Positions 1 to 8,849 of a stretch of DNA of 8,856 nucleotides are shown here, one piece after another (the stretch's first letter is position 1; every line of letters begins with the position of its first letter). The stretch covers positions 1-8,856 of the forward strand of contig NW_021828408.1 in NCBI RefSeq assembly GCF_006345805.1, read 5' to 3'. The notes under the pieces were generated by a model. The model ran no database searches. It was not told the DNA's origin and saw nothing but the letters and a program-made list of their open reading frames with translations. The DNA is from Octopus sinensis (lineage: Eukaryota). The position numbers were made by a program, and so were the translations under genes.

Positions 1-1583
1 CTCCCCTTGCTAATCTGTGGAGAAACTCACTGGATGCTGGCTATATTCCTAAAAACTTTCTGTCCCAGTCTGTTGTCCCAGTTTTCAAAAAGGAAACAAG
101 TCCCTTGCAGTGAATACCGTACCGTCCGATCTCACTCACTTCTCCTATCATCAAGGTATTGAGAGGGTGGGTGAGATCTCGAATAACCCAATTTCTGGAA
201 AGCAACAGACGGCTGATCTCTAACCAACATGGTTCCGTAATGGAAGGGACTGCCTAACGCAGCTCCTGCATCACTTTGATGACATTTGAGAGCTTTGGGA
301 GAGGGCTCCAACACCGATGTCATCTACCTTGATTTCAGCAAGGCCTTCGACAGTGTCGATCACAAGATCCTATTGAAAAAACTATCCAACATTGGTGTCT
401 CTGGAAAGTCACTGAAATGGATCAAGTGTTTCCTGACAGACAGATCTCAACATGTTATAGTTGAAAGGAGTAAAATCAAGCCCAGCCAAAGTCATTAGTG
501 GCGTTCCGCAAGGCACTGTGCTGGGCCCACTCACTTCTTTCATCATCTACATTAATGACATTAATGACATCATCAAGCACAGCAACATAGAAATCTTTGC
601 AGATGATTCCAAGCTCCAGAAGGTCATAAATGAGCGAGTGACCGGACATGCCTTCAGTCAGATCTACTGGCTGTTATCCAATGGGCAGAAAAGAACAATA
701 TGCTGCTGAACGAGGATAAATTCGAGTTAATCCACTTTGGAAAAAGGATGCCCTGAAACTCCCATACTCCCTTCCTTCAGGTGAAACTCTCGTGGCATCT
801 AACAACATCAGAGACTTGGGAGTAATCGTGGACAACAACATAAGCTGGGCCACTCATATAAACAACCAAAGTTGACATGGGCCGCAGAATGTTTTCCTGG
901 ATTCTCAGAACTTTCCAGTCGAGAGATATCCACACACCATTTCTCCTCTCTCTCTCCACTTTTACGCCCGACCCCACCTTAATATACTGTTGTCCACTGT
1001 GGTCTCCCCACACAAAACAAAGTATCATAAAAGTTGAAGCACCTCAAAGGTCAATCACAAAAAAGATAGATGGCATGACAGGCCTCGACTATTAGGGTCG
1101 ATTAGAAAAGCTAAAACTTTATTCCTCTCCAACGTCGCCATGAGCGCTACACAACTGCATGATGTGGAAAATATTCCATCAGCATTGCCTAAATGATGTT
1201 GGCATCACCTTTAAGGTACATCCAAGCTTGGGCCCCGTGCCATCCGCCCACAACAAAAATCGCACTCTCATCTCAAACAACAATACGGCACAATTATCCA
1301 CCTCACTGACTGGCCCCGCTCTCTTTACATTACACCAAAACACATTAAAACAGAACCGAGAGACCCTATAGGGTTCAAGAAGTCTTTGGACAGATTCCTT
1401 CAAGAAATCCCGGATAAACCTCCTACACCCGGATATGTCTCTGTAAACAATAACTCTCTACTTGAGTGGGCCTTAGTGCCCAAATTCTGACTTGAAAGAC
1501 TTCACCAGGTGGTGCTATTAAGTTAGAGATGGCCTGGGCCAATAATGGCCGAAACCTATCAAAGTATCAAAGTATCAAAGTAT
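1..1583 (+). mobile_element. Decayed 3' portion of a CR1-group (CR1/L2/Crack-like) non-LTR retrotransposon, running off the left window edge
   Basis: RT-like peptides in register across frameshifts, a short 3' UTR (1491-1556) with a GGCCA-ATAA-TGGCC hairpin (1537-1550), and an 8-bp tandem tail (TATCAAAG)x3 at 1557-1580. A 3' stem-loop followed by a short tandem-repeat tail is typical of CR1/L2-group LINEs. Confidence 0.92.
3..1490 (+). pseudogene. LINE ORF2 reverse transcriptase domain and C-terminus, disrupted by several frameshifts and stops
   Basis: Manual translation across frames gives PLANLWRNSLDAGYIPKNFLSQSVVPVFKK, (Y)RPISLTS, NQHG, VIYLDFSKAFDSVDHKILLKKL, GVPQGTVLGP, IFADDSKL (catalytic [Y/F]ADD), RDLGVIVD, YCCPLWSP and FKKSLDRFLQEIPDKPPTPGY...NSLLEW, ending at TGA 1488-1490. 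Confidence 0.93.
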
Positions 1584-1620
1584 ATATATATATAAATATA
1601 CAAACATATACACCTACACA
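1557..1620 (+). repeat. LINE tail (TATCAAAG)x3 merging into a (TA)n/(CA)-like microsatellite
   Basis: Read directly from the sequence. Confidence 0.85.
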
Positions 1621-1866
1621 CATTGTAATACATTTTCATACATAGGTACATTTATTCATCAAACACGAATGACAGTCGGCTCCACCCCATTCTATCATTA
1701 TTATCATTATTATTGTCATATCCGTGACATGTTTTTGTATTTGACTAACATTAGATTCTGACAGGAGCAAATCTTCTCTTTTTCTTTCATTTCTCCTCCT
1801 AAACCCATACACACAGACACACGATAAATGTCTATTTGTCTCTCTGAGTGTATATTAGACTTTACA

Positions 1867-1936
1867 TCTCTCTCTCTCACTCCCTCCCTCTCTCTCACTC
1901 CTCCTCTCTCTCACCCCCCTCTCTCTCTTTCTCTCT
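1867..1936. repeat. Degenerate (CT)n microsatellite
   Basis: Interrupted tctctctc runs. Confidence 0.9.
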
Positions 1937-2348
1937 ATTTCGTATGTATGTGTTCATTTTTTCATACACGCCCAAACATAATATACATACATTTATATAG
2001 ACACATACATATATATCCTCTACTGACACATACTTATACACACACACACATACACACATGTTCACTTTCTTACTTTATGAGGACCGAGAATGTATTCAGA
2101 CTAAATTTGATTTTTTGTTGTTGTTGTCCCCCTCTTTTCAGCGACAGGTAAATGTATTGGGGAACAACGACCAACAAAAATAATTCAATATGACTAAAAC
2201 GATGTTTATCGTTGTTATATATATATATATATTATAATCTATTTACATATATTTCTATATATGTTTATAGACATGTATATACATGTATGAGCGCTGTGTT
2301 TATATGTTAGTATATATACATATACATATATATGTGTGCGTATAGATA

Positions 2349-2560
2349 TTCTTTTTTCTTTTATTTTTTTCAGTCATTTGACTGTGACCATGCTGGAGCA
2401 CCACCTTTAGTCGAGCAAATCGACCTCAGAGCTTATTCTTCGTAAGCCTAGTACTTATTCTATCGGTCTCTTTTGCCGAATTGAGCCGCTAAGTTACGGG
2501 GACGTAAACACACCAGCATCGGTTGTCAAGCGATGTTGGGCGAACAAACACAGACACACA
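2349..2560 (-). mobile_element. SINE-like interspersed repeat, copy A (3' part; octopus-type family)
   Basis: Reverse complement of copy B and colinear with copy C. T-rich tail at 2349-2370. Orientation is inferred from the A-rich tail; no tRNA-derived head is seen in the window. Family recognition is from memory. Confidence 0.85.
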
Positions 2561-2561
2561 A

Positions 2562-2746
2562 GCTTGACAACCGATGAAGGTGAGTTTATTTCCCCGTAAA
2601 TTTGCAGATCGGTTCGGCAAAAGTAACCCATAGAATAAGTACTAGGCTTACGAAGAATAAGCCCTGGGGTCGATTTGCTCGACTAAAGGTGGTGCTCCAG
2701 CATGGCCGCAGTCAAATGATTGAAACAAGTAAAAGAATAAAAGAAT
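2562..2746 (+). mobile_element. SINE-like interspersed repeat, copy B (3' part)
   Basis: gcttgacaaccgatg...ggtgctccagcatggccgcagtcaaatgattgaaacaagtaaaagaataaaagaat. I counted 142/161 ungapped matches to the reverse complement of copy A. Confidence 0.85.
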
Positions 2747-2748
2747 GT

Positions 2749-2752
<4 letters not shown>

Positions 2753-2809
<57 letters not shown>
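2753..2809. repeat. (AT)n followed by (GT)n microsatellite
   Basis: Read directly; follows the SINE B tail. Confidence 0.97.
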
Positions 2810-2812
<3 letters not shown>

Positions 2813-3442
2813 ACGTAGGTATGTATACATTTATGTCAGGTCACTCTCCAGTGCTGTTGGAAATATGTAACCCAGTACAACCTGCCGAATGGTCGGGTTG
2901 TCGGCGACTAAACCGGCAAACGCACCAATCTTACTTGGTGACGAAGGAGACTTGGGCATCCTGGGGGATGAAAAATGATATGTCCCATTTTGTTTCTCTG
3001 CTGGACTGGCCCGAACGGTGTACCTTTGTCGAGTGACCTTACTGACTGTGATTGTCCACATTAGCAGTGGACCAGCTCACTTCTCGCCTGGAGGCGTCCG
3101 CCACGACAAAGAACAAAACCTGTCAAAGGGTAAGCGTCAACGTCCATTCAGTAGAGCGTATAAGGAGGAGTTAACCTTTATGACGAAAAATCTCCGAGCC
3201 AGCGACATGGGGAGTAGCATGACAGCTCTGAGTTGTGTACGTTGAACTTCATTCGATGTATGATCTTCATTCGGCGAAACTACATGACACAATATGGGTA
3301 GCGGAAGATTCTCTTCAACCAACGGTCAGTCTAGGGTCAAAATATCCAATTAAAGGATTAATGTGAGTTGGTTAATCACTTTAGCTATTTAATAACACCA
3401 TGAGGTTCTGGAACCTAATATTGTCACCGATTGAGGTTGGAT

Positions 3443-3517
3443 GAGTAGTAGTAGTAGTAGTAGTTGTTGTTGTTGTAGTAGTAGTAGTAGTAGTAGTATT
3501 AGTATTAGTATTAGTAT

Positions 3518-3558
<41 letters not shown>

Positions 3559-3577
3559 TGTATGTATGTATGTATGT
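3443..3577. repeat. Compound microsatellite: (TAG)n, (TTG)n, (TAGTAT)n, (TAG)n, (TATG)n
   Basis: Read directly. It accounts for the poly-S, poly-L and poly-T ORFs in the track. Confidence 0.97.
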
Positions 3578-3713
3578 ACCCACGTATGATAATTATCATC
3601 TTATGATAATGTATATATATATCTGGTTTAAAAAGCCACATCAGCTGCCATGATGGTTCTAAGGTGTAAGTACAGGAGGTGGTCAAACTCTGCATAAGGA
3701 GACCAAACCCACC

Positions 3714-3766
3714 ATATATATATATATATATATATCTATATATATATATATACATACACACACACA

Positions 3767-3818
<52 letters not shown>

Positions 3819-3830
3819 TACACACACACG
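3714..3830. repeat. (TA)n followed by (CA)n microsatellite
   Basis: Read directly. Confidence 0.97.
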
Positions 3831-4028
3831 CACGAACGGGTGCTGAAAATTTCCTGGCTTTGACTAACAGAAAATACAAGTGGATTATAAATTATAATTT
3901 TATTCAACATATTTCCCTCTCAAATTAACACACTTATTGTAGCGGTCCTTCAGTTTTTTAAGAGCTGTAAAAGAAGCCAGAAATTTGGGACTCCAGCCAG
4001 GCTAGAACCGTTTTCAGCAACCACCGTA
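3831..4028. mobile_element. Mariner-type non-autonomous element (MITE), ~200 bp, copy 1
   Basis: Degenerate terminal inverted repeats: left cacgaacgggTGCTGAAAAtttcctggc, right gccagg...TTTTCAGCAaccaccgta, ending in TA. The interior 3901-4000 aligns with 6161-6260. Confidence 0.78.
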
Positions 4029-4044
4029 TACATACATACATACA

Positions 4045-4097
<53 letters not shown>
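4029..4097. repeat. (TACA)n followed by (TA)n microsatellite
   Basis: Read directly. Confidence 0.97.
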
Positions 4098-4099
<2 letters not shown>

Positions 4100-4300
4100 C
4101 TGTTTTTCTTTTAAATTGATTCAGTCATTTGACTGCGGCCATGCTGGAGCACCGCCTTTAGTCGAACGAATCGACCCCAGGACTTATTCCTTGTAAAACG
4201 AGTACTTATTCTATCGGTCTCTTTTGCCGCTACGTTATGGGGATGCAAAAACACCAGCATCGGTTGCCAAGTGATGTTGGGGAAGGGGAACAAACACACA
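4098..4300 (-). mobile_element. SINE-like interspersed repeat, copy C (3' part)
   Basis: cagtcatttgactgcggccatgctggagcaccgcctttagtcga...gtacttattctatcggtctcttttgccg...accagcatcggttg, colinear with copy A and ending in (CA)n. Confidence 0.85.
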
Positions 4301-4305
4301 TGCAC

Positions 4306-4349
<44 letters not shown>

Positions 4350-4375
4350 TATACTATATACATATATATAAATAT

Positions 4376-4415
<40 letters not shown>

Positions 4416-4459
4416 ATATATATATGCATGTATATGTATATCTATGTCTCTCTCTCTCT

Positions 4460-4521
<62 letters not shown>

Positions 4522-4533
4522 TATATAAAATAT

Positions 4534-4567
<34 letters not shown>

Positions 4568-4580
4568 GCATATATATATA
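4293..4580. repeat. Compound (CA)n/(TA)n/(CT)n microsatellite block
   Basis: Read directly. Confidence 0.97.
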
Positions 4581-5216
4581 AAAATGCAATGCAAAGGGAG
4601 GGAACGTGCCTGTGTATTTGCGTCTCTTCCTCTGTTTATGTCTCATCTCTTCTCCTCGCCGGCAACCTATCTTATTCCATTACATTCTGTCCATGCTTTT
4701 CAAATAAAAACCTATCCTTTTACTCGTTGTCTGGACAAACATACAAACATGGAATTGCATTTCATAGTGTTGTTTTGAAGGAATCGGTTTATTTGCAATG
4801 TATAGACTCTAGAATTTGCCCTCAGCAATTTGTCTGTTTAGGATCACTTCACACGACGTACAGCAACGCCAGCCAATCTCGCTTTTCAAAAACATACCTT
4901 CAACGCCGTATTACGTTCTTCTTCCCATTCCAAGGCCAATGCACTCCCGCGCCGTCCACACACACACCACAGACGATTTATACCCGTACACCGAATATTT
5001 CTACAGATTCCATATTTTGTTAACATTCACTTAGCATCGTATTGGCAGGTTTCCACTGCCATTATTTACTGTTTCTAAAAGATTCTCGGCCACAGACAAC
5101 AAACGCGCAAGTCAAGTATAGTGTGTGTATGTATGTATGTGTGTGTTTACAAGGTATATGATTCAGTATACGTGCATGTCAGACATGCGCACATGCTCAC
5201 ACAGCTACACACGCGA

Positions 5217-5218
5217 GC

Positions 5219-5267
<49 letters not shown>
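5217..5267. repeat. (TA)n microsatellite
   Basis: Read directly. Confidence 0.97.
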
Positions 5268-5268
<1 letters not shown>

Positions 5269-5560
5269 CAATTACGTGTGCATGTGCGTCAGTGTTTGCT
5301 CATACATAAATATATAAATATATGCATACAAATACTGATATTTGAAGAATCAGTATTGTCAGTGGATTCAAACTTTTGGTCACTTAGGCCAATCGTTGGG
5401 CTGCGATACACTGATGTTAAACCGGCTAAAACTCCGAAGTTACAGTCAATAATATTCTTGTGTAAGAGTAACACATTTGTACACTACAAACATTTAGAGT
5501 AACCCATCAGATTAATGTGAATTTTGTTTAATTATAACTGAACATAAAAACAACCATAAA

Positions 5561-5666
5561 CTATATATATATATAGTCTATATACATACATACTCCCACA
5601 CACATATGTAATATATATACATATACGTATCTACATATAATATATAATACATACATACATACATAC

Positions 5667-5723
<57 letters not shown>

Positions 5724-5736
5724 GTATGTATGTATA
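5561..5736. repeat. Compound (TA)n/(TACA)n/(TATG)n microsatellite
   Basis: Read directly. Confidence 0.95.
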
Positions 5737-6009
5737 TGCAGTAATCCATCGACAATCGCGGGGGGTGGGGGTTGGAACGTAACACCCGCGTGAAAATCTG
5801 CGAAGTAGAAACAGTGCTGTATATATATATTTTAAAATTATTTTTATTATTTATATATATTTATTTTGTTAATTTTATATACCTAAGCTTTCATAAACCC
5901 TCCTCACATTTTTAGGAGTACCCGTGTCTTCTCTTTTTTACCTCCTGACTTTAGCTTTCCATACAGTATATGTGATAGGTGAACCGCGATATGGCGTATG
6001 ATTACTGCA
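5737..6009. mobile_element. pogo/Tigger-type (Tc1-mariner superfamily) MITE, 273 bp
   Basis: Termini TGCAGTAATC (5737-5746) and GATTACTGCA (6000-6009) are perfect inverted repeats, with a further shared ATCGCGG/CCGCGAT just inside. Flanked by TA at 5735-5736 and 6010-6011. A CAGT-start TIR plus a CGCGGG...CCCGCG subterminal hairpin resembles Tigger/MER2-type ends. Confidence 0.8.
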
Positions 6010-6160
6010 TAAATATATTGGGTTTAGTTAACAGAAAAAAAACTACAACACATTAATTAATAGTATACTTTCCTTTGTTGCTTAGACTTCCTTCCATCGT
6101 TCACTAAGTTTTTCGATGCCCCGGGGAGGGATAGAAATCTCCCGGTCTTGACTCAAAGAA

Positions 6161-6308
6161 TATTCAAGATATTCCCCTCCCAGATTCACACACTTATCGC
6201 AGAGATCCTTCAGTTTTCCAAACCCCGTAAAAACCTCGGAAGATTGGACCTCCAACCAGCCTTTCGCGAAACCCTTAAACCTAAGACCTTTTTCAGCACC
6301 CTCTCGTG
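6161..6308. mobile_element. Mariner-type MITE, copy 2 (right portion only)
   Basis: Aligns to 3901-4028. TTTTCAGCACCC at 6290-6301 is the exact reverse complement of GGGTGCTGAAAA at 3838-3849 in the left TIR of copy 1. The left ~70 bp are missing. Confidence 0.78.
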
Positions 6309-6668
6309 TTTTTTTAATTTTCTCCTGGTTTACGGAATTAATATTTTTTTTGCGGTTGAAGCCTTGGCTGCTATTTCTAGTGGGTTGAACGGCCTATTAT
6401 GGCCGTTCCTAAATTTTGCTGTTGAATTTATTAATAGTCTCTGACTATTTCCTTTTTTTCCCACTAGGCCGCTGGTGGCAAATAATTTCTACTGAATTTT
6501 TTGCTACCCTATATTGATAAATTATGAATTTTCTGTTTAATTCCTAAATGGAATCGGCAGCGTATATTTGCTGCCGATAAATTTGGCGCGAGTACGATGA
6601 TTTGAAAATTTTAGGTCAGATATTGCCGAGACAGTAGTGGTGCTGCCTCGTGAAAATATCGGTCCCAT

Positions 6669-6785
6669 CTGGCTTACTTTACTGATGAATTTGTTGGCCT
6701 ATGGAAGATTAGCTTGATTTAATTTAATCAGGCTGATTTACCATTAAAAAACAGACGAAACGATGCTTTGTATAAAGTATTACAG
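6669..6785 (+). ncRNA. Type I hammerhead ribozyme motif, copy 1 (predicted cleavage GUA|U between 6772 and 6773)
   Basis: Stem I UACUUUA 6675-6681 pairs perfectly with UAAAGUA 6773-6779. Core CUGAUGA at 6682-6688. Stem II AUUUGUU 6689-6695 / AACAGAC 6750-6756 plus a 19-bp extension (6701-6719/6726-6744). GAAA at 6757-6760. Stem III is A-U, C-G, G.U, A-U with loop UGCU, then GUA at 6770-6772. Distal stem I CUG 6669-6671 / CAG 6783-6785 lies beyond a 3x3 internal loop. Caveat: 10.1-11.1 is A.C rather than the usual G-C. Confidence 0.85.
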
Positions 6786-7151
6786 GGTAAATGTTTTTTT
6801 AATTTTCTCCTGGTTTACGGAATTAATATTTTTTTTTGCGGTTGAAGCCTTGGCTGCTATTTCTAGTGGGTTGAACGGCCTATTATGCCGTTCCTAAATT
6901 TTGCTGTTGAATTTATTAATAGTCTCTGACTATTTCCTTTTTTTCCACTAGGCCGCTGGTGGCAAATATTTCTACTGAATTTTTTGCTACCCTATATTGA
7001 TAAATTATGAATTTTCTGTTTAATTCCTAAATGGAATCGGCAGCGTATATTTGCTGCCGATAAATTTGGCGCGAGTACGATGATTTGAAAATTTTAGGTC
7101 AGATATTGCCGAGACAGTAGTGGTGCTGCCTCGTGAAAATATCGGTCCCAT

Positions 7152-7271
7152 CTGGCTTACTTTAACTGATGAATTTGTTGGCCTATGGAAGATTAGCTTG
7201 ATTAATTTAATCATCAGGCTGATTTACCATTAAAAAACAGACGAAACGATGCATTGTATAAAGTATTACAG
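7152..7271 (+). ncRNA. Type I hammerhead ribozyme motif, copy 2 (predicted cleavage between 7258 and 7259)
   Basis: CUGAUGA at 7166-7172, GAAA at 7243-7246, GUA at 7256-7258, stem I 7158-7164 / 7259-7265. One extra A (7165) must bulge from stem I. Stem III contains the palindrome AUGCAU (7249-7254). Same A.C at 10.1-11.1 as copy 1. Confidence 0.8.
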
Positions 7272-7393
7272 GGTAAATGTTTTTTTAATTTTCTCCTGGT
7301 TTACGGAATTAATATTTTTTTTGCGGTTGAAGCCTTGGCTGCTATTTCTAGTGGGTTGAACGGCCTATTATGGCCGTTCCTAAATTTTGCTGC

Positions 7394-7409
7394 TATATAT
7401 ATATATATA
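7394..7409. repeat. (TA)8 microsatellite at the right junction of the ribozyme array
   Basis: Read directly. Confidence 0.95.
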
Positions 7410-8739: not shown

Positions 8740-8809
8740 GACGGAGAGAGCGAGAATATAACATAGGGAAAGAGAAAGACAGAAAAAGGAGAAGGAAGAT
8801 AAGAAAGAG

Positions 8810-8849
<40 letters not shown>

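What the first reader, a model, noticed from the sequence alone, without database searches (positions are those of the whole stretch)
6307..7392. Tandem repeat with a hammerhead ribozyme in every unit: candidate non-LTR retrozyme
Seen: both full ~485-bp units contain every type I hammerhead element in the right order and spacing. These are the stem I strand UACUUUA, CUGAUGA, a closed stem II, GAAA, a short stem III, the GUA triplet and the complementary UAAAGUA immediately after the cut, plus a 3x3 internal loop in stem I suited to tertiary contacts. The ORF track does not reveal this. Established: type I hammerheads in tandem genomic repeats occur in newt, schistosome and cricket satellites and define non-autonomous non-LTR retrozymes of animals, which are expressed as linear and circular RNAs. 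Inference: this is a retrozyme family in a probable cephalopod genome. I cannot tell from the sequence whether it is already described.
Basis: partly seen in the sequence, partly recalled or inferred. Interest (0 to 1): 0.95.

Follow-up and report, generated by a model that had tools for sequence, protein, structure and literature searches.

The report
Hammerhead-ribozyme tandem repeat in octopus-like DNA
A 1.1-kb stretch made of 2.2 copies of a 486-base non-coding repeat carries a self-cutting "hammerhead" RNA motif in each full copy, which fits a known kind of small animal jumping element (a non-LTR retrozyme), here in an octopus-like genome, though these two copies look weakened.

Summary
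The observation mostly holds. Window 6307-7392 is 2.24 head-to-tail copies of a ~486-bp, 36% GC, non-coding unit, about 98% alike. Unit 1 has a complete type I hammerhead layout: 7-bp stem I, CUGAUGA, closed stem II, GAAA, 4-bp stem III, GUA, predicted cut at 6772/6773. No motif as strong in all three stems appeared in 19,840 shuffles of the window.

Caveats:
- The conserved G10.1-C11.1 pair is an A·C mismatch in both units.
- Unit 2 has an extra A between stem I and the core.
- No Rfam hammerhead model matches, even at E<=10.
- Predicted folding disfavours the catalytic fold.

The array sits exactly between the end of an interspersed repeat and a (TA)8 microsatellite. A second copy of that repeat in the window runs straight into its microsatellite, which reads like an empty site. 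This fits retrotransposition into AT-rich DNA, as Penelope-like elements do.

Another repeat in the window matches only Octopus bimaculoides gene models, so "cephalopod" is supported.

Not shown: other copies, covariation, expression, cleavage.

Verdict: a new member of a known kind (non-LTR retrozyme), and this copy is probably weak or decayed. Interest is modest.

The parts
6307..7392 (+). Whole array: 2.24 head-to-tail units of a ~486-bp non-coding repeat. It starts at position 20 of the cut-to-cut monomer and ends at position 134.
   Evidence: boundaries read
6773..7258 (+). One monomer as hammerhead cleavage would release it (486 nt, 35.6% GC). This is the predicted linear, then circular, RNA.
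   Evidence: Circular MFE is -130.9 kcal/mol against -102.7 +/- 5.9 for 200 shuffles (z -4.8), with 63% of bases paired
6664..6790 (+). Hammerhead motif of unit 1, including the distal stem I (CCC..CUG 6664-6671 with CAGGG 6783-6787) and the 3x3 internal loop (6672-6674 / 6780-6782)
6675..6681 (+). Stem I, 5' strand UACUUUA (positions 2.7-2.1), unit 1
6682..6688 (+). Core box CUGAUGA (C3-A9), unit 1
6689..6756 (+). Stem II with its long extension. It holds the A10.1 (6689)·C11.1 (6756) mismatch; 6 bp at 6690-6695/6750-6755; a 5x5 internal loop; AUGG/CCAU at 6701-6704/6741-6744; and a 14-bp apical hairpin at 6706-6719/6726-6739.
6757..6772 (+). GAAA (G12-A15.1), stem III (6760-6763/6768-6771, loop UGCU) and GUA. 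Predicted cut after A6772.
6773..6779 (+). Stem I, 3' strand UAAAGUA (positions 1.1-1.7), unit 1
7158..7265 (+). Hammerhead motif of unit 2. Elements: UACUUUA 7158-7164; extra A 7165; CUGAUGA 7166-7172; GAAA 7243-7246; stem III/loop 3 ACGAUGCAUUGU 7246-7257, a perfect palindrome if G.U pairs are allowed; A17 at 7258; UAAAGUA 7259-7265. Predicted cut 7258/7259.
6757..6797 (+). Competing hairpin that sequesters G12-A17 (6757-6772 paired with 6781-6797) in the minimum-energy fold. The same structure occurs at 7243-7283 in unit 2.
7358..7379 (+). Perfect 8-bp hairpin GAACGGCC-UAUUAU-GGCCGUUC, 13 nt before the 3' end of the array (also at 6387-6408; one G is deleted in unit 2). It may lie near the site where reverse transcription began (inference).
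7393..7409 (.). C(TA)8: the microsatellite directly after the array, and the presumed AT-rich target
6126..6306 (.). 3' part of interspersed repeat 'X', which ends exactly where the array begins. It may extend upstream to about 5882.
   Evidence: About 77% identical to 3838-4025
3834..4094 (.). Second copy of repeat X (3834-4025). Its end runs straight into (TACA)n(TA)n at 4026-4094, so it is a paralogous 'empty site' for the array.

Best explanation
This is a retrozyme-type insertion: a non-autonomous, non-coding retroelement of the kind described for animals in 2020, sitting in an octopus-like genome.

Shown:
- There are 2.24 tandem units of ~486 bp.
- Each full unit carries, on the + strand only, a type I hammerhead motif with all invariant core bases.
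- The unit RNA is predicted to be much more structured than shuffled sequence.
- The array lies exactly between the end of an older interspersed repeat and a TA microsatellite, where a second copy of that repeat has nothing inserted.

Inferred mechanism, from published work on this class:
1. A multimeric + strand transcript forms hammerheads.
2. Stem III with its loop is self-complementary (perfectly so in unit 2). Two neighbouring motifs can therefore pair into a double hammerhead with a 12-bp helix III.
3. Cutting after GUA (6772/6773 and 7258/7259) releases a 486-nt RNA with 5'-OH and 2',3'-cyclic phosphate ends.
4. A host tRNA ligase closes that RNA into a circle.
5. A reverse transcriptase from an autonomous element, most likely a Penelope-like element, nicks AT-rich DNA and copies the circle more than twice round. 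This would give a non-integer number of units with arbitrary start and end points.

These two copies are probably poor ribozymes:
- Both have an A10.1·C11.1 mismatch.
- Unit 2 has a one-base insertion at the stem I/core junction.
- Helix II is AU-rich.
- A competing hairpin covers half the core.
For: Tandem structure.

Motif: all core positions are present (C3-A9, G12-A14, A15.1-U16.1, A17), with three helices in type I order. The relaxed descriptor gave 27 hits in 19,840 window shuffles, none as strong in all three stems.

Dimer pairing of stem III: the unit 2 homodimer is -16.5 kcal/mol with 12 contiguous pairs, against 0.0 for its hairpin. The unit 1 x unit 2 heterodimer is -12.5 kcal/mol. 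A short helix III capped by a palindromic loop is the published signature of metazoan type I hammerheads that work as dimers.

Class features: low GC (35.6%) and a structured monomer (z -4.8). No ORF longer than 81 codons, and no protein homologue for any frame of the unit. These match the published features of the class.

Insertion evidence: repeat X ends in ...TTTTCAGCA.CC.C.CG in both copies. It is followed by (TACA)n(TA)n at 4026, but by the array and then C(TA)8 at 6307-7409.

Penelope-like elements: they nick AT-rich DNA, start reverse transcription inside the RNA at a site not homologous to the target, and favour (TA)n. Recently active Penelope-like elements are reported in Octopus vulgaris.

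Host: repeat Y matches only Octopus bimaculoides gene models.
Against: - No Rfam hammerhead model matches at any threshold tried.
- The G10.1-C11.1 pair, the most conserved pair after A15.1-U16.1, is an A·C mismatch.
- Unit 2 fails the descriptor because of the extra A at 7165.
- The catalytic fold is 6 kcal/mol above the minimum-energy fold for unit 1. In the ensemble of the dimer transcript, stems I and III have a probability of 0.5% or less.
- Three of the seven differences between units fall in the ~115-nt hammerhead region, so nothing suggests selection on it within this array.
- Only one locus is in hand. There is no covariation, copy number, target-site duplication, Penelope-like ORF in the window, or expression data.
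- Five of the seven differences between units are homopolymer-length changes, which may be assembly errors.
Confidence: 0.7

Rival explanations
1. The array is the terminal repeat (pseudo-LTR) region of an autonomous Penelope-like element. It is either a truncated partial tandem that lost its ORF or solo pseudo-LTRs, rather than a separate non-autonomous family.
For: Penelope-like elements carry type I hammerheads in their pseudo-LTRs, insert as partial tandems and favour (TA)n targets. Their hammerheads have a longer helix II (6-8 bp), as seen here. A 2026 preprint finds that vertebrate retrozymes are sister to pseudo-LTRs.
Against: No reverse transcriptase or GIY-YIG ORF of that type lies next to the array. 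The only RT in the window is a frameshifted LINE fragment 5 kb away. The unit repeats at 486 bp, not at the 3-4 kb of a full element. Helix I here is 7 bp, not the 4-5 bp of the minimal Penelope-type motif, and a real helix III is present.
Confidence: 0.15
2. The array is a small block of hammerhead-bearing satellite DNA, as in newt satellite 2 or cricket pDo500, and it was amplified in place by unequal exchange or slippage. Retrotransposition through a circular RNA played no part.
For: The unit length (486 bp) is like pDo500 (463-505 bp). The units are 98% alike and could come from a recent local duplication. There is no target-site duplication.
Against: There are only 2.24 units, in a dispersed, microsatellite-rich setting rather than a long array. 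The ends are sharp and sit in the middle of the unit, between repeat X and its TA tail, with a paralogous empty site in the same window. The pDo500 hammerhead is a compact 49-nt motif, unlike this 105-nt one.
Confidence: 0.1
3. An ordinary minisatellite contains hammerhead-like boxes by chance.
For: No covariance model recognises the motif. The catalytic fold is thermodynamically disfavoured. The sequence is AT-rich, which makes short stems such as UACUUUA/UAAAGUA easier to find. In a scan of a whole genome, a per-window chance of about 1e-4 still gives some false hits.
Against: None of 19,840 shuffles was as strong in all three stems. Beyond what the descriptor asks for, the motif has a palindromic helix III/loop 3, lies in a tandem repeat of the right size and composition, sits on one strand only, and has a continuation of stem I beyond a symmetric internal loop.
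Confidence: 0.05

Closest known systems
Metazoan non-LTR retrozymes (Cervera and de la Pena 2020, PMC7229834; Li, Clavereau and Pollet 2026 preprint, 10.64898/2026.07.22.740005), for example the 350-390-bp repeats of the mussel Mytilus galloprovincialis
   Same: Short tandem units each carry a type I hammerhead. GC is low. There are no ORFs, LTRs or tRNA-like parts. The monomer is highly self-paired, the number of units is small and non-integer, and the host is a mollusc.
   Different: The unit (486 bp) is above the 170-400 nt quoted for invertebrates, though inside the 51-972 bp range of the 2026 survey. Helix II carries a ~55-nt extension, so the motif spans 105 nt. Positions 10.1/11.1 are an A·C mismatch. 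Expression, circles and copy number were not shown here. No paper in the searched library reports such elements in cephalopods.
Hammerheads of Penelope-like elements (Cervera and de la Pena 2014, PMC4209133; Frangieh et al. 2024, PMC11167929)
   Same: Type I topology, a long helix II, a palindromic helix III region suited to dimers, low expected activity as a monomer, and insertion next to AT-rich or (TA)n DNA.
   Different: No adjacent RT/GIY-YIG ORF. Helix I is 7 bp, not 4-5 bp. A 4-bp helix III is present. The conserved G10.1-C11.1 pair is absent.
Hammerhead satellites: newt satellite 2 and Dolichopoda pDo500 (PMC2837043)
   Same: A tandem genomic repeat with one type I hammerhead per unit. 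The pDo500 unit is 463-505 bp. Double-hammerhead models have been proposed for both.
   Different: Those are long satellite arrays with compact motifs (49 nt in pDo500). This is a 2.24-unit dispersed insertion with a 105-nt motif.
Rfam Hammerhead_1 (RF00163) and the other Rfam hammerhead families
   Same: Same invariant core boxes and helix order, by direct reading of the sequence.
   Different: No match at gathering score or at E<=10. The long helix II insert and the 10.1/11.1 mismatch probably explain this, but I could not test that with the tools available.

Membership tests
Hammerhead ribozyme, type I | Invariant core: C3 U4 G5 A6 N7 G8 A9, G12 A13 A14, A15.1-U16.1, H17 (not G) | tested here: met
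   CUGAUGA 6682-6688, GAAA 6757-6760, U16.1 6771, A17 6772. The same elements occur in unit 2.
Hammerhead ribozyme, type I | Three helices around the core, with helix I open and helices II and III closed | tested here: met
   Unit 1 has 7, 6 and 4 bp in helices I, II and III. Unit 2 meets this only if A7165 is bulged out.
Hammerhead ribozyme, type I | G10.1-C11.1 pair at the base of helix II | tested here: not met
   A6689 lies opposite C6756, and A7173 opposite C7242. The literature ranks this pair as the most conserved after 15.1-16.1.
Hammerhead ribozyme, type I | Score at or above the gathering threshold of an Rfam hammerhead covariance model | tested here: not met
   No hammerhead family was listed at gathering score or at E<=10, even on the 126-nt motif alone.
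Hammerhead ribozyme, type I | Tertiary contact between helix I loop or bulge and loop 2 | tested here: inconclusive
   A 3x3 internal loop exists 7 bp from the core, and a 5x5 loop lies 7 positions up helix II. The helix lengths differ from the canonical 6 and 4 bp. No contact can be inferred from sequence alone.
Hammerhead ribozyme, type I | Compensatory changes in the helices among related copies | not testable with these tools
   No other copy was found: translated-frame search; pattern scans of metagenome, prokaryote-genome and viral collections gave only chance hits. The two units differ by no compensatory pair.
Hammerhead ribozyme, type I | Mg2+-dependent self-cleavage at H17 | not testable with these tools
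   This needs a bench assay. The predicted catalytic fold is 6 kcal/mol above the MFE and rare in the ensemble.
Non-LTR retrozyme | Short tandem repeat units (about 150-450 bp; 51-972 bp in the 2026 survey), each with a type I hammerhead | tested here: met
   2.24 units of 485-486 bp; ranges taken.
Non-LTR retrozyme | [quoted passage not shown] 2026 for an 'active' element) | tested here: inconclusive
   Unit 1 passes my descriptor. Unit 2 fails by one inserted A in a T/A run, which could be a mutation or an assembly error.
Non-LTR retrozyme | Low GC (<45-50%), and no LTR, ORF or tRNA-like parts | tested here: met
   GC is 35.6%. Open frames are 81 codons or fewer, with no homologue. No tRNA and no Rfam family. 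PBS and PPT were not searched for separately.
Non-LTR retrozyme | Monomer RNA highly self-paired | tested here: met
   Circular fold is -130.9 kcal/mol, z -4.8 against shuffles, with 63% of bases paired.
Non-LTR retrozyme | Dispersed multi-copy family in the genome | not testable with these tools
   The host genome is not in any searchable collection.
Non-LTR retrozyme | Expressed as linear and circular RNA of unit length | not testable with these tools
   No transcriptome data are available here.
Non-LTR retrozyme | Co-occurrence with autonomous Penelope-like elements in the host | not tested
   None is in the window. The literature reports recently active ones in Octopus vulgaris and remnants of Naiad-type ones in cephalopods.
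Penelope-like element pseudo-LTR | The hammerhead lies in repeats flanking an RT plus GIY-YIG ORF | tested here: not met
   No such ORF lies within 6 kb upstream or 1.4 kb downstream.
Hammerhead satellite DNA (newt sat2, pDo500) | Long homogeneous arrays | tested here: not met
   Only 2.24 units, with unique flanks on both sides.

The most novel reading that the evidence does not exclude
The element defines an undescribed octopus retrozyme family. Its hammerhead works despite an A10.1·C11.1 base and a ~55-nt helix II extension, perhaps only as a double hammerhead or with help from a Penelope-like element protein. It would give abundant ~486-nt circular RNAs in cephalopod tissues. In that reading, the helix II extension or the hairpin next to the 3' end of the array serves as the recognition and start site for the reverse transcriptase.
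Probability: 0.25. Interest if true: 0.45.

Novelty: new member of a known kind. Interest (0 to 1): 0.3.

Why it matters
If real and expressed, this would extend ribozyme-made circular RNAs to cephalopods. The searchable literature reports no retrozymes or hammerhead repeats in that group, and recent repeat catalogues do not mention them.

The locus is also a tidy single example of where such an array lands. It sits exactly at the junction of an older repeat and its TA microsatellite, with an unfilled paralogue nearby. That fits the proposal that Penelope-like elements mobilise retrozymes.

There is a practical point. Tandem Repeats Finder did not report this array, and no Rfam model saw the motif. 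Pipelines built on those two steps would therefore miss it.

None of this changes the picture of the class; it adds a member.

Tried and rejected
1. Rfam covariance models, three runs: whole window at gathering score, 1.2 kb at E<=10, and the 126-nt motif at E<=10. No hammerhead or other ribozyme family matched. The weak C/D-box snoRNA and miRNA hits are chance matches to UGAUGA/CUGA boxes and to the helix II hairpin.

2. Looking for other copies through spurious ORFs. I joined seven open frames of the unit into one query against 5.8 billion proteins. Nothing scored E<=0.01.

3. Exact pattern CTGATGAATTTG-N50-70-CGAAACGATG:
- Six metagenome loci were hit, none similar beyond the pattern.
- One Verrucomicrobiota contig was hit.
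- No viral contig was hit.
All are chance matches.

4. Sequence strings of the motif searched in the literature returned only unrelated primers.

5. Host identity from the LINE reverse transcriptase at 1-1400. The best hits were 47-52% identical (65% on a 208-aa fragment). Named relatives are ctenophores, so this is not informative. Repeat Y gave the answer instead.

6. Exact look-ups of a window ORF and of the Octopus proteins, made to fetch more genome, found nothing on record.

7. The minus-strand ORF in the 5' flank hit one 2756-aa protein (E 3e-31, 13 stretches). That protein is a translated ~58-aa satellite, and each stretch scores only about 9 bits, so I rejected it as an artefact of summing. 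Pfam found nothing.

8. No target-site duplication was found. The longest word shared by the two flanks is 5 nt.

9. pDo500 identity was rejected. The unit length is similar, but its hammerhead is a compact 49-nt motif.

10. Reading A6689 as the extra unpaired base seen between A9 and 10.1 in Penelope-type motifs was rejected. It would leave U opposite C11.1, which is still unpaired.
Full report
**1. What is there**

Window 6307-7392 is a head-to-tail repeat. Copies start at 6307, 6792 and 7278, with spacing of 485 and 486 bp.

A three-way alignment shows seven differences between the two full units:
- Five are homopolymer-length changes.
- One is a small rearrangement at the tip of a hairpin.
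- One is a substitution.

BLAST of the cut-to-cut monomer 6773-7258 against the window gives 97.9% identity over 471 bp (6307-6772) and 98.5% over 135 bp (7259-7392). Nothing else in the window matches. The array is therefore 2.24 units.

Tandem Repeats Finder did not report it, either in the tool's own run or in two runs of mine with a maximum period of 2000.

The unit has 35.6% GC. Its longest open frame is 81 codons, and no frame has a protein relative. There is no tRNA and no Rfam family.

**2. The hammerhead motif**

Unit 1 reads, 5' to 3':
- UACUUUA (6675-6681)
- CUGAUGA (6682-6688)
- A (6689)
- UUUGUU (6690-6695)
- a 54-nt imperfect hairpin
- AACAGA (6750-6755)
- C (6756)
- GAAA (6757-6760)
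- CGA-UGCU-UUG
- U (6771) and A (6772)
- UAAAGUA (6773-6779)

All invariant core positions are present. Helix I is 7 bp. Helix II is 6 bp, one of them G.U. Helix III is 4 bp (A-U, C-G, G.U, A-U) with a tetraloop.

In a fold constrained to the hammerhead, helix I continues past a 3x3 internal loop (GCU/UUA) into CUG/CAG and CCC/GGG.

**3. Is it more than chance?**

I wrote a relaxed type I descriptor. It required:
- CUGANGA
- GAAA within 96 nt
- helix I of at least 5 bp
- helix II of at least 3 bp, with a mismatch allowed at 10.1/11.1
- helix III of at least 2 bp
- U then H before helix I

It found one site in the window, the one in unit 1. In 19,840 dinucleotide-preserving shuffles of the whole window, scanned on both strands, it found 27 sites. 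None was as strong in all three helices, and two had as many stem pairs in total.

The per-window chance is therefore about 1e-4 or less.

The two units are copies of one another and count as one observation.

**4. What does not fit a good ribozyme**

(a) Position 10.1 is A opposite C11.1 in both units. The literature read here calls G10.1-C11.1 the most conserved pair after A15.1-U16.1. It notes that a U·U mismatch is the best tolerated mispair. One axolotl retrozyme family has such a U·U mismatch.

(b) Unit 2 has an extra A (7165) between helix I and C3, and so fails the descriptor. The change lies in a T/A run and could be an assembly error.

(c) No Rfam hammerhead model matches at gathering score or at E<=10, even when only the 126-nt motif is given. 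The 54-nt insert in helix II probably costs most of the score, but I could not test a shortened version.

(d) Thermodynamics do not favour the catalytic fold:
- For 6655-6800 the catalytic fold is -34.0 kcal/mol against an MFE of -40.0.
- In the ensemble of the 636-nt dimer transcript, helices I and III have a probability of 0.5% or less.
- In that ensemble G12-A17 pair with 6781-6797 in a 15-bp hairpin, and CUGAUG pairs with an upstream CAUCUG.
- The competing 3' arm is transcribed after helix I is complete. A co-transcriptional window for cleavage is therefore conceivable, but that is inference.

(e) Three of the seven differences between units lie in the hammerhead region, so nothing suggests constraint within this array.

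**5. Features that fit the metazoan class**

Helix III plus loop 3 is self-complementary. In unit 2, ACGAUGCAUUGU can form 12 contiguous pairs with a second copy (-16.5 kcal/mol), while its own hairpin scores 0.0. Unit 1 has U for A in the loop and gives -8.5 kcal/mol, and the heterodimer gives -12.5.

A short helix III capped by a small palindromic loop, with activity as a double hammerhead in tandem transcripts, is the published signature of metazoan type I motifs. This adds only modest statistical weight, because any hairpin stem can also pair between two molecules. The extra information is the palindromic tetraloop, roughly a 1-in-16 event.

The monomer folded as a circle gives -130.9 kcal/mol, against -102.7 +/- 5.9 for 200 shuffles (z -4.8). 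This agrees with the 'highly self-paired' retrozyme RNAs.

**6. How it got there**

The 5' flank of the array (about 6126-6306) is ~77% identical to 3838-4025. Both copies of this interspersed repeat, which I call X, end in ...TTTTCAGCA.CC.C.CG.
- At 4025 that end is followed at once by (TACA)n(TA)n.
- At 6306 it is followed by the array, and then by C(TA)8 at 7393-7409.

Joining the two flanks in a script lines them up with the other copy. This is a paralogous empty site, not an orthologous one. It still shows that the array is an insertion with sharp ends, placed between X and its TA tail. There is no target-site duplication.

The array starts at position 20 and ends at position 134 of the monomer. 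That is what rolling-circle copying of a circular template would give.

Penelope-like elements nick AT-rich DNA and begin reverse transcription inside the RNA at a site not homologous to the target. They favour (TA)n. They have been proposed as the mobilisers of animal retrozymes.

The 3' end of the array lies 13 nt past a perfect 8-bp hairpin. This recalls the stem-loop start site described for the anole element, but it is a single observation.

**7. Host**

The LINE reverse-transcriptase fragment at 1-1400 was not informative. Its best hits were 47-52% identical, with ctenophore names.

A different interspersed repeat, Y, occurs three times: 2352-2540, inverted at 2562-2741, and 4103-4281. 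Its translated frames hit only three proteins among 5.8 billion. All three are Octopus bimaculoides gene models of unrelated function (liprin-alpha, VWFC-domain protein, FAM98A), at 77-79% identity over 40-48 residues. This shows the repeat has been taken into gene models there.

Octopus vulgaris is reported to have recently active Penelope-like elements. That repeat catalogue does not mention ribozymes.

No paper in the library pairs hammerhead ribozymes with cephalopods, apart from one on Penelope-like elements and one on twister ribozymes.

**8. Comparison with known systems**

The locus works like, and by structure belongs with, the non-LTR retrozymes of animals. Mussel repeats of 350-390 bp are the nearest described mollusc case.

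It differs in three ways:
- The unit is larger.
- Helix II is very long.
- Positions 10.1/11.1 are mismatched.

It shares the long helix II and the dimer-prone helix III with Penelope-type hammerheads. It lacks their ORF, their short helix I and their G10.1-C11.1 pair.

It is not pDo500 or newt satellite 2.

Membership of the hammerhead class by covariance model was tested and not met. Membership by core and helix layout is met, apart from one conserved pair.

**9. Verdict**

This is a real hammerhead-bearing tandem insertion of the retrozyme kind in an octopus-like genome.
- Confidence that the motif is a hammerhead by descent and the array a retrozyme-type insertion: about 0.7.
- My estimate that these particular copies cleave detectably in vitro: about 0.35.

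It is a new member of a known kind.

Noticed in passing
window 2352-2540 (+), 2562-2741 (-), 4103-4281 (+): An interspersed repeat 'Y' of ~180-190 bp occurs three times, each next to microsatellites. The first two copies form a 180-nt inverted repeat, 88% complementary, with a 30-nt spacer. If transcribed, that would make a long double-stranded RNA hairpin. Its translated frames match segments inside three unrelated Octopus bimaculoides gene models, so the repeat has been exonised or mis-annotated there.
   Followed up: partly
window 3834-4025 and about 5882/6126-6306: An interspersed repeat 'X' occurs twice, ~77% alike. Both copies share the same 3' end followed by a TA-rich microsatellite, and the first copy is shorter at its 5' side, which looks like a 5'-truncated retroposon. 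It has no Pfam or protein relative. Its minus-strand 82-codon frame is probably chance.
   Followed up: partly
window 1-1400 (+): A frameshifted fragment of a LINE reverse transcriptase (RVT_1). Its best protein relatives are 47-52% identical. A 786-bp ENA metagenome contig (L007) is 76.6% identical in DNA over 593 bp. The fragment ends in (TATCAAAG)3 and TA-rich repeats at 1557-1660.
   Followed up: partly
window 1557-5737 and 8768-8849: Microsatellite density is very high, with (TC)n, (TA)n, (TG)n, (AGT)38, (AC)n, (ATAC)n and (GAAAGA)n tracts. The repeats X and Y and the hammerhead array all border such tracts.
   Followed up: no
window 6307-7392: Tandem Repeats Finder does not report the 485-bp period under three parameter sets, although the units are 98% alike. 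Retrozyme pipelines that start from that program would miss this array.
   Followed up: partly
window 6367, 6412, 6469, 6492, 7165 (unit 1 against unit 2): Five of the seven differences between the units are one-base changes in homopolymer runs, a pattern typical of long-read assembly errors. One of them is the extra A that breaks the unit 2 hammerhead. Another removes a G from the perfect hairpin GAACGGCC-TATTAT-GGCCGTTC.
   Followed up: no
window 6553-6578 and 7036-7061: A perfect 9-bp hairpin, ATCGGCAGC-GTATATTT-GCTGCCGAT, occurs in each unit. It is one of several near-perfect local hairpins that account for the strong predicted structure of the monomer.
   Followed up: no
P0121 (2756 aa, library protein): A giant predicted 'protein' in the public library is a translated ~58-residue tandem satellite. 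It gave a misleading E-value of 3e-31 against a 74-residue query, through 13 weak repeated matches.
   Followed up: yes
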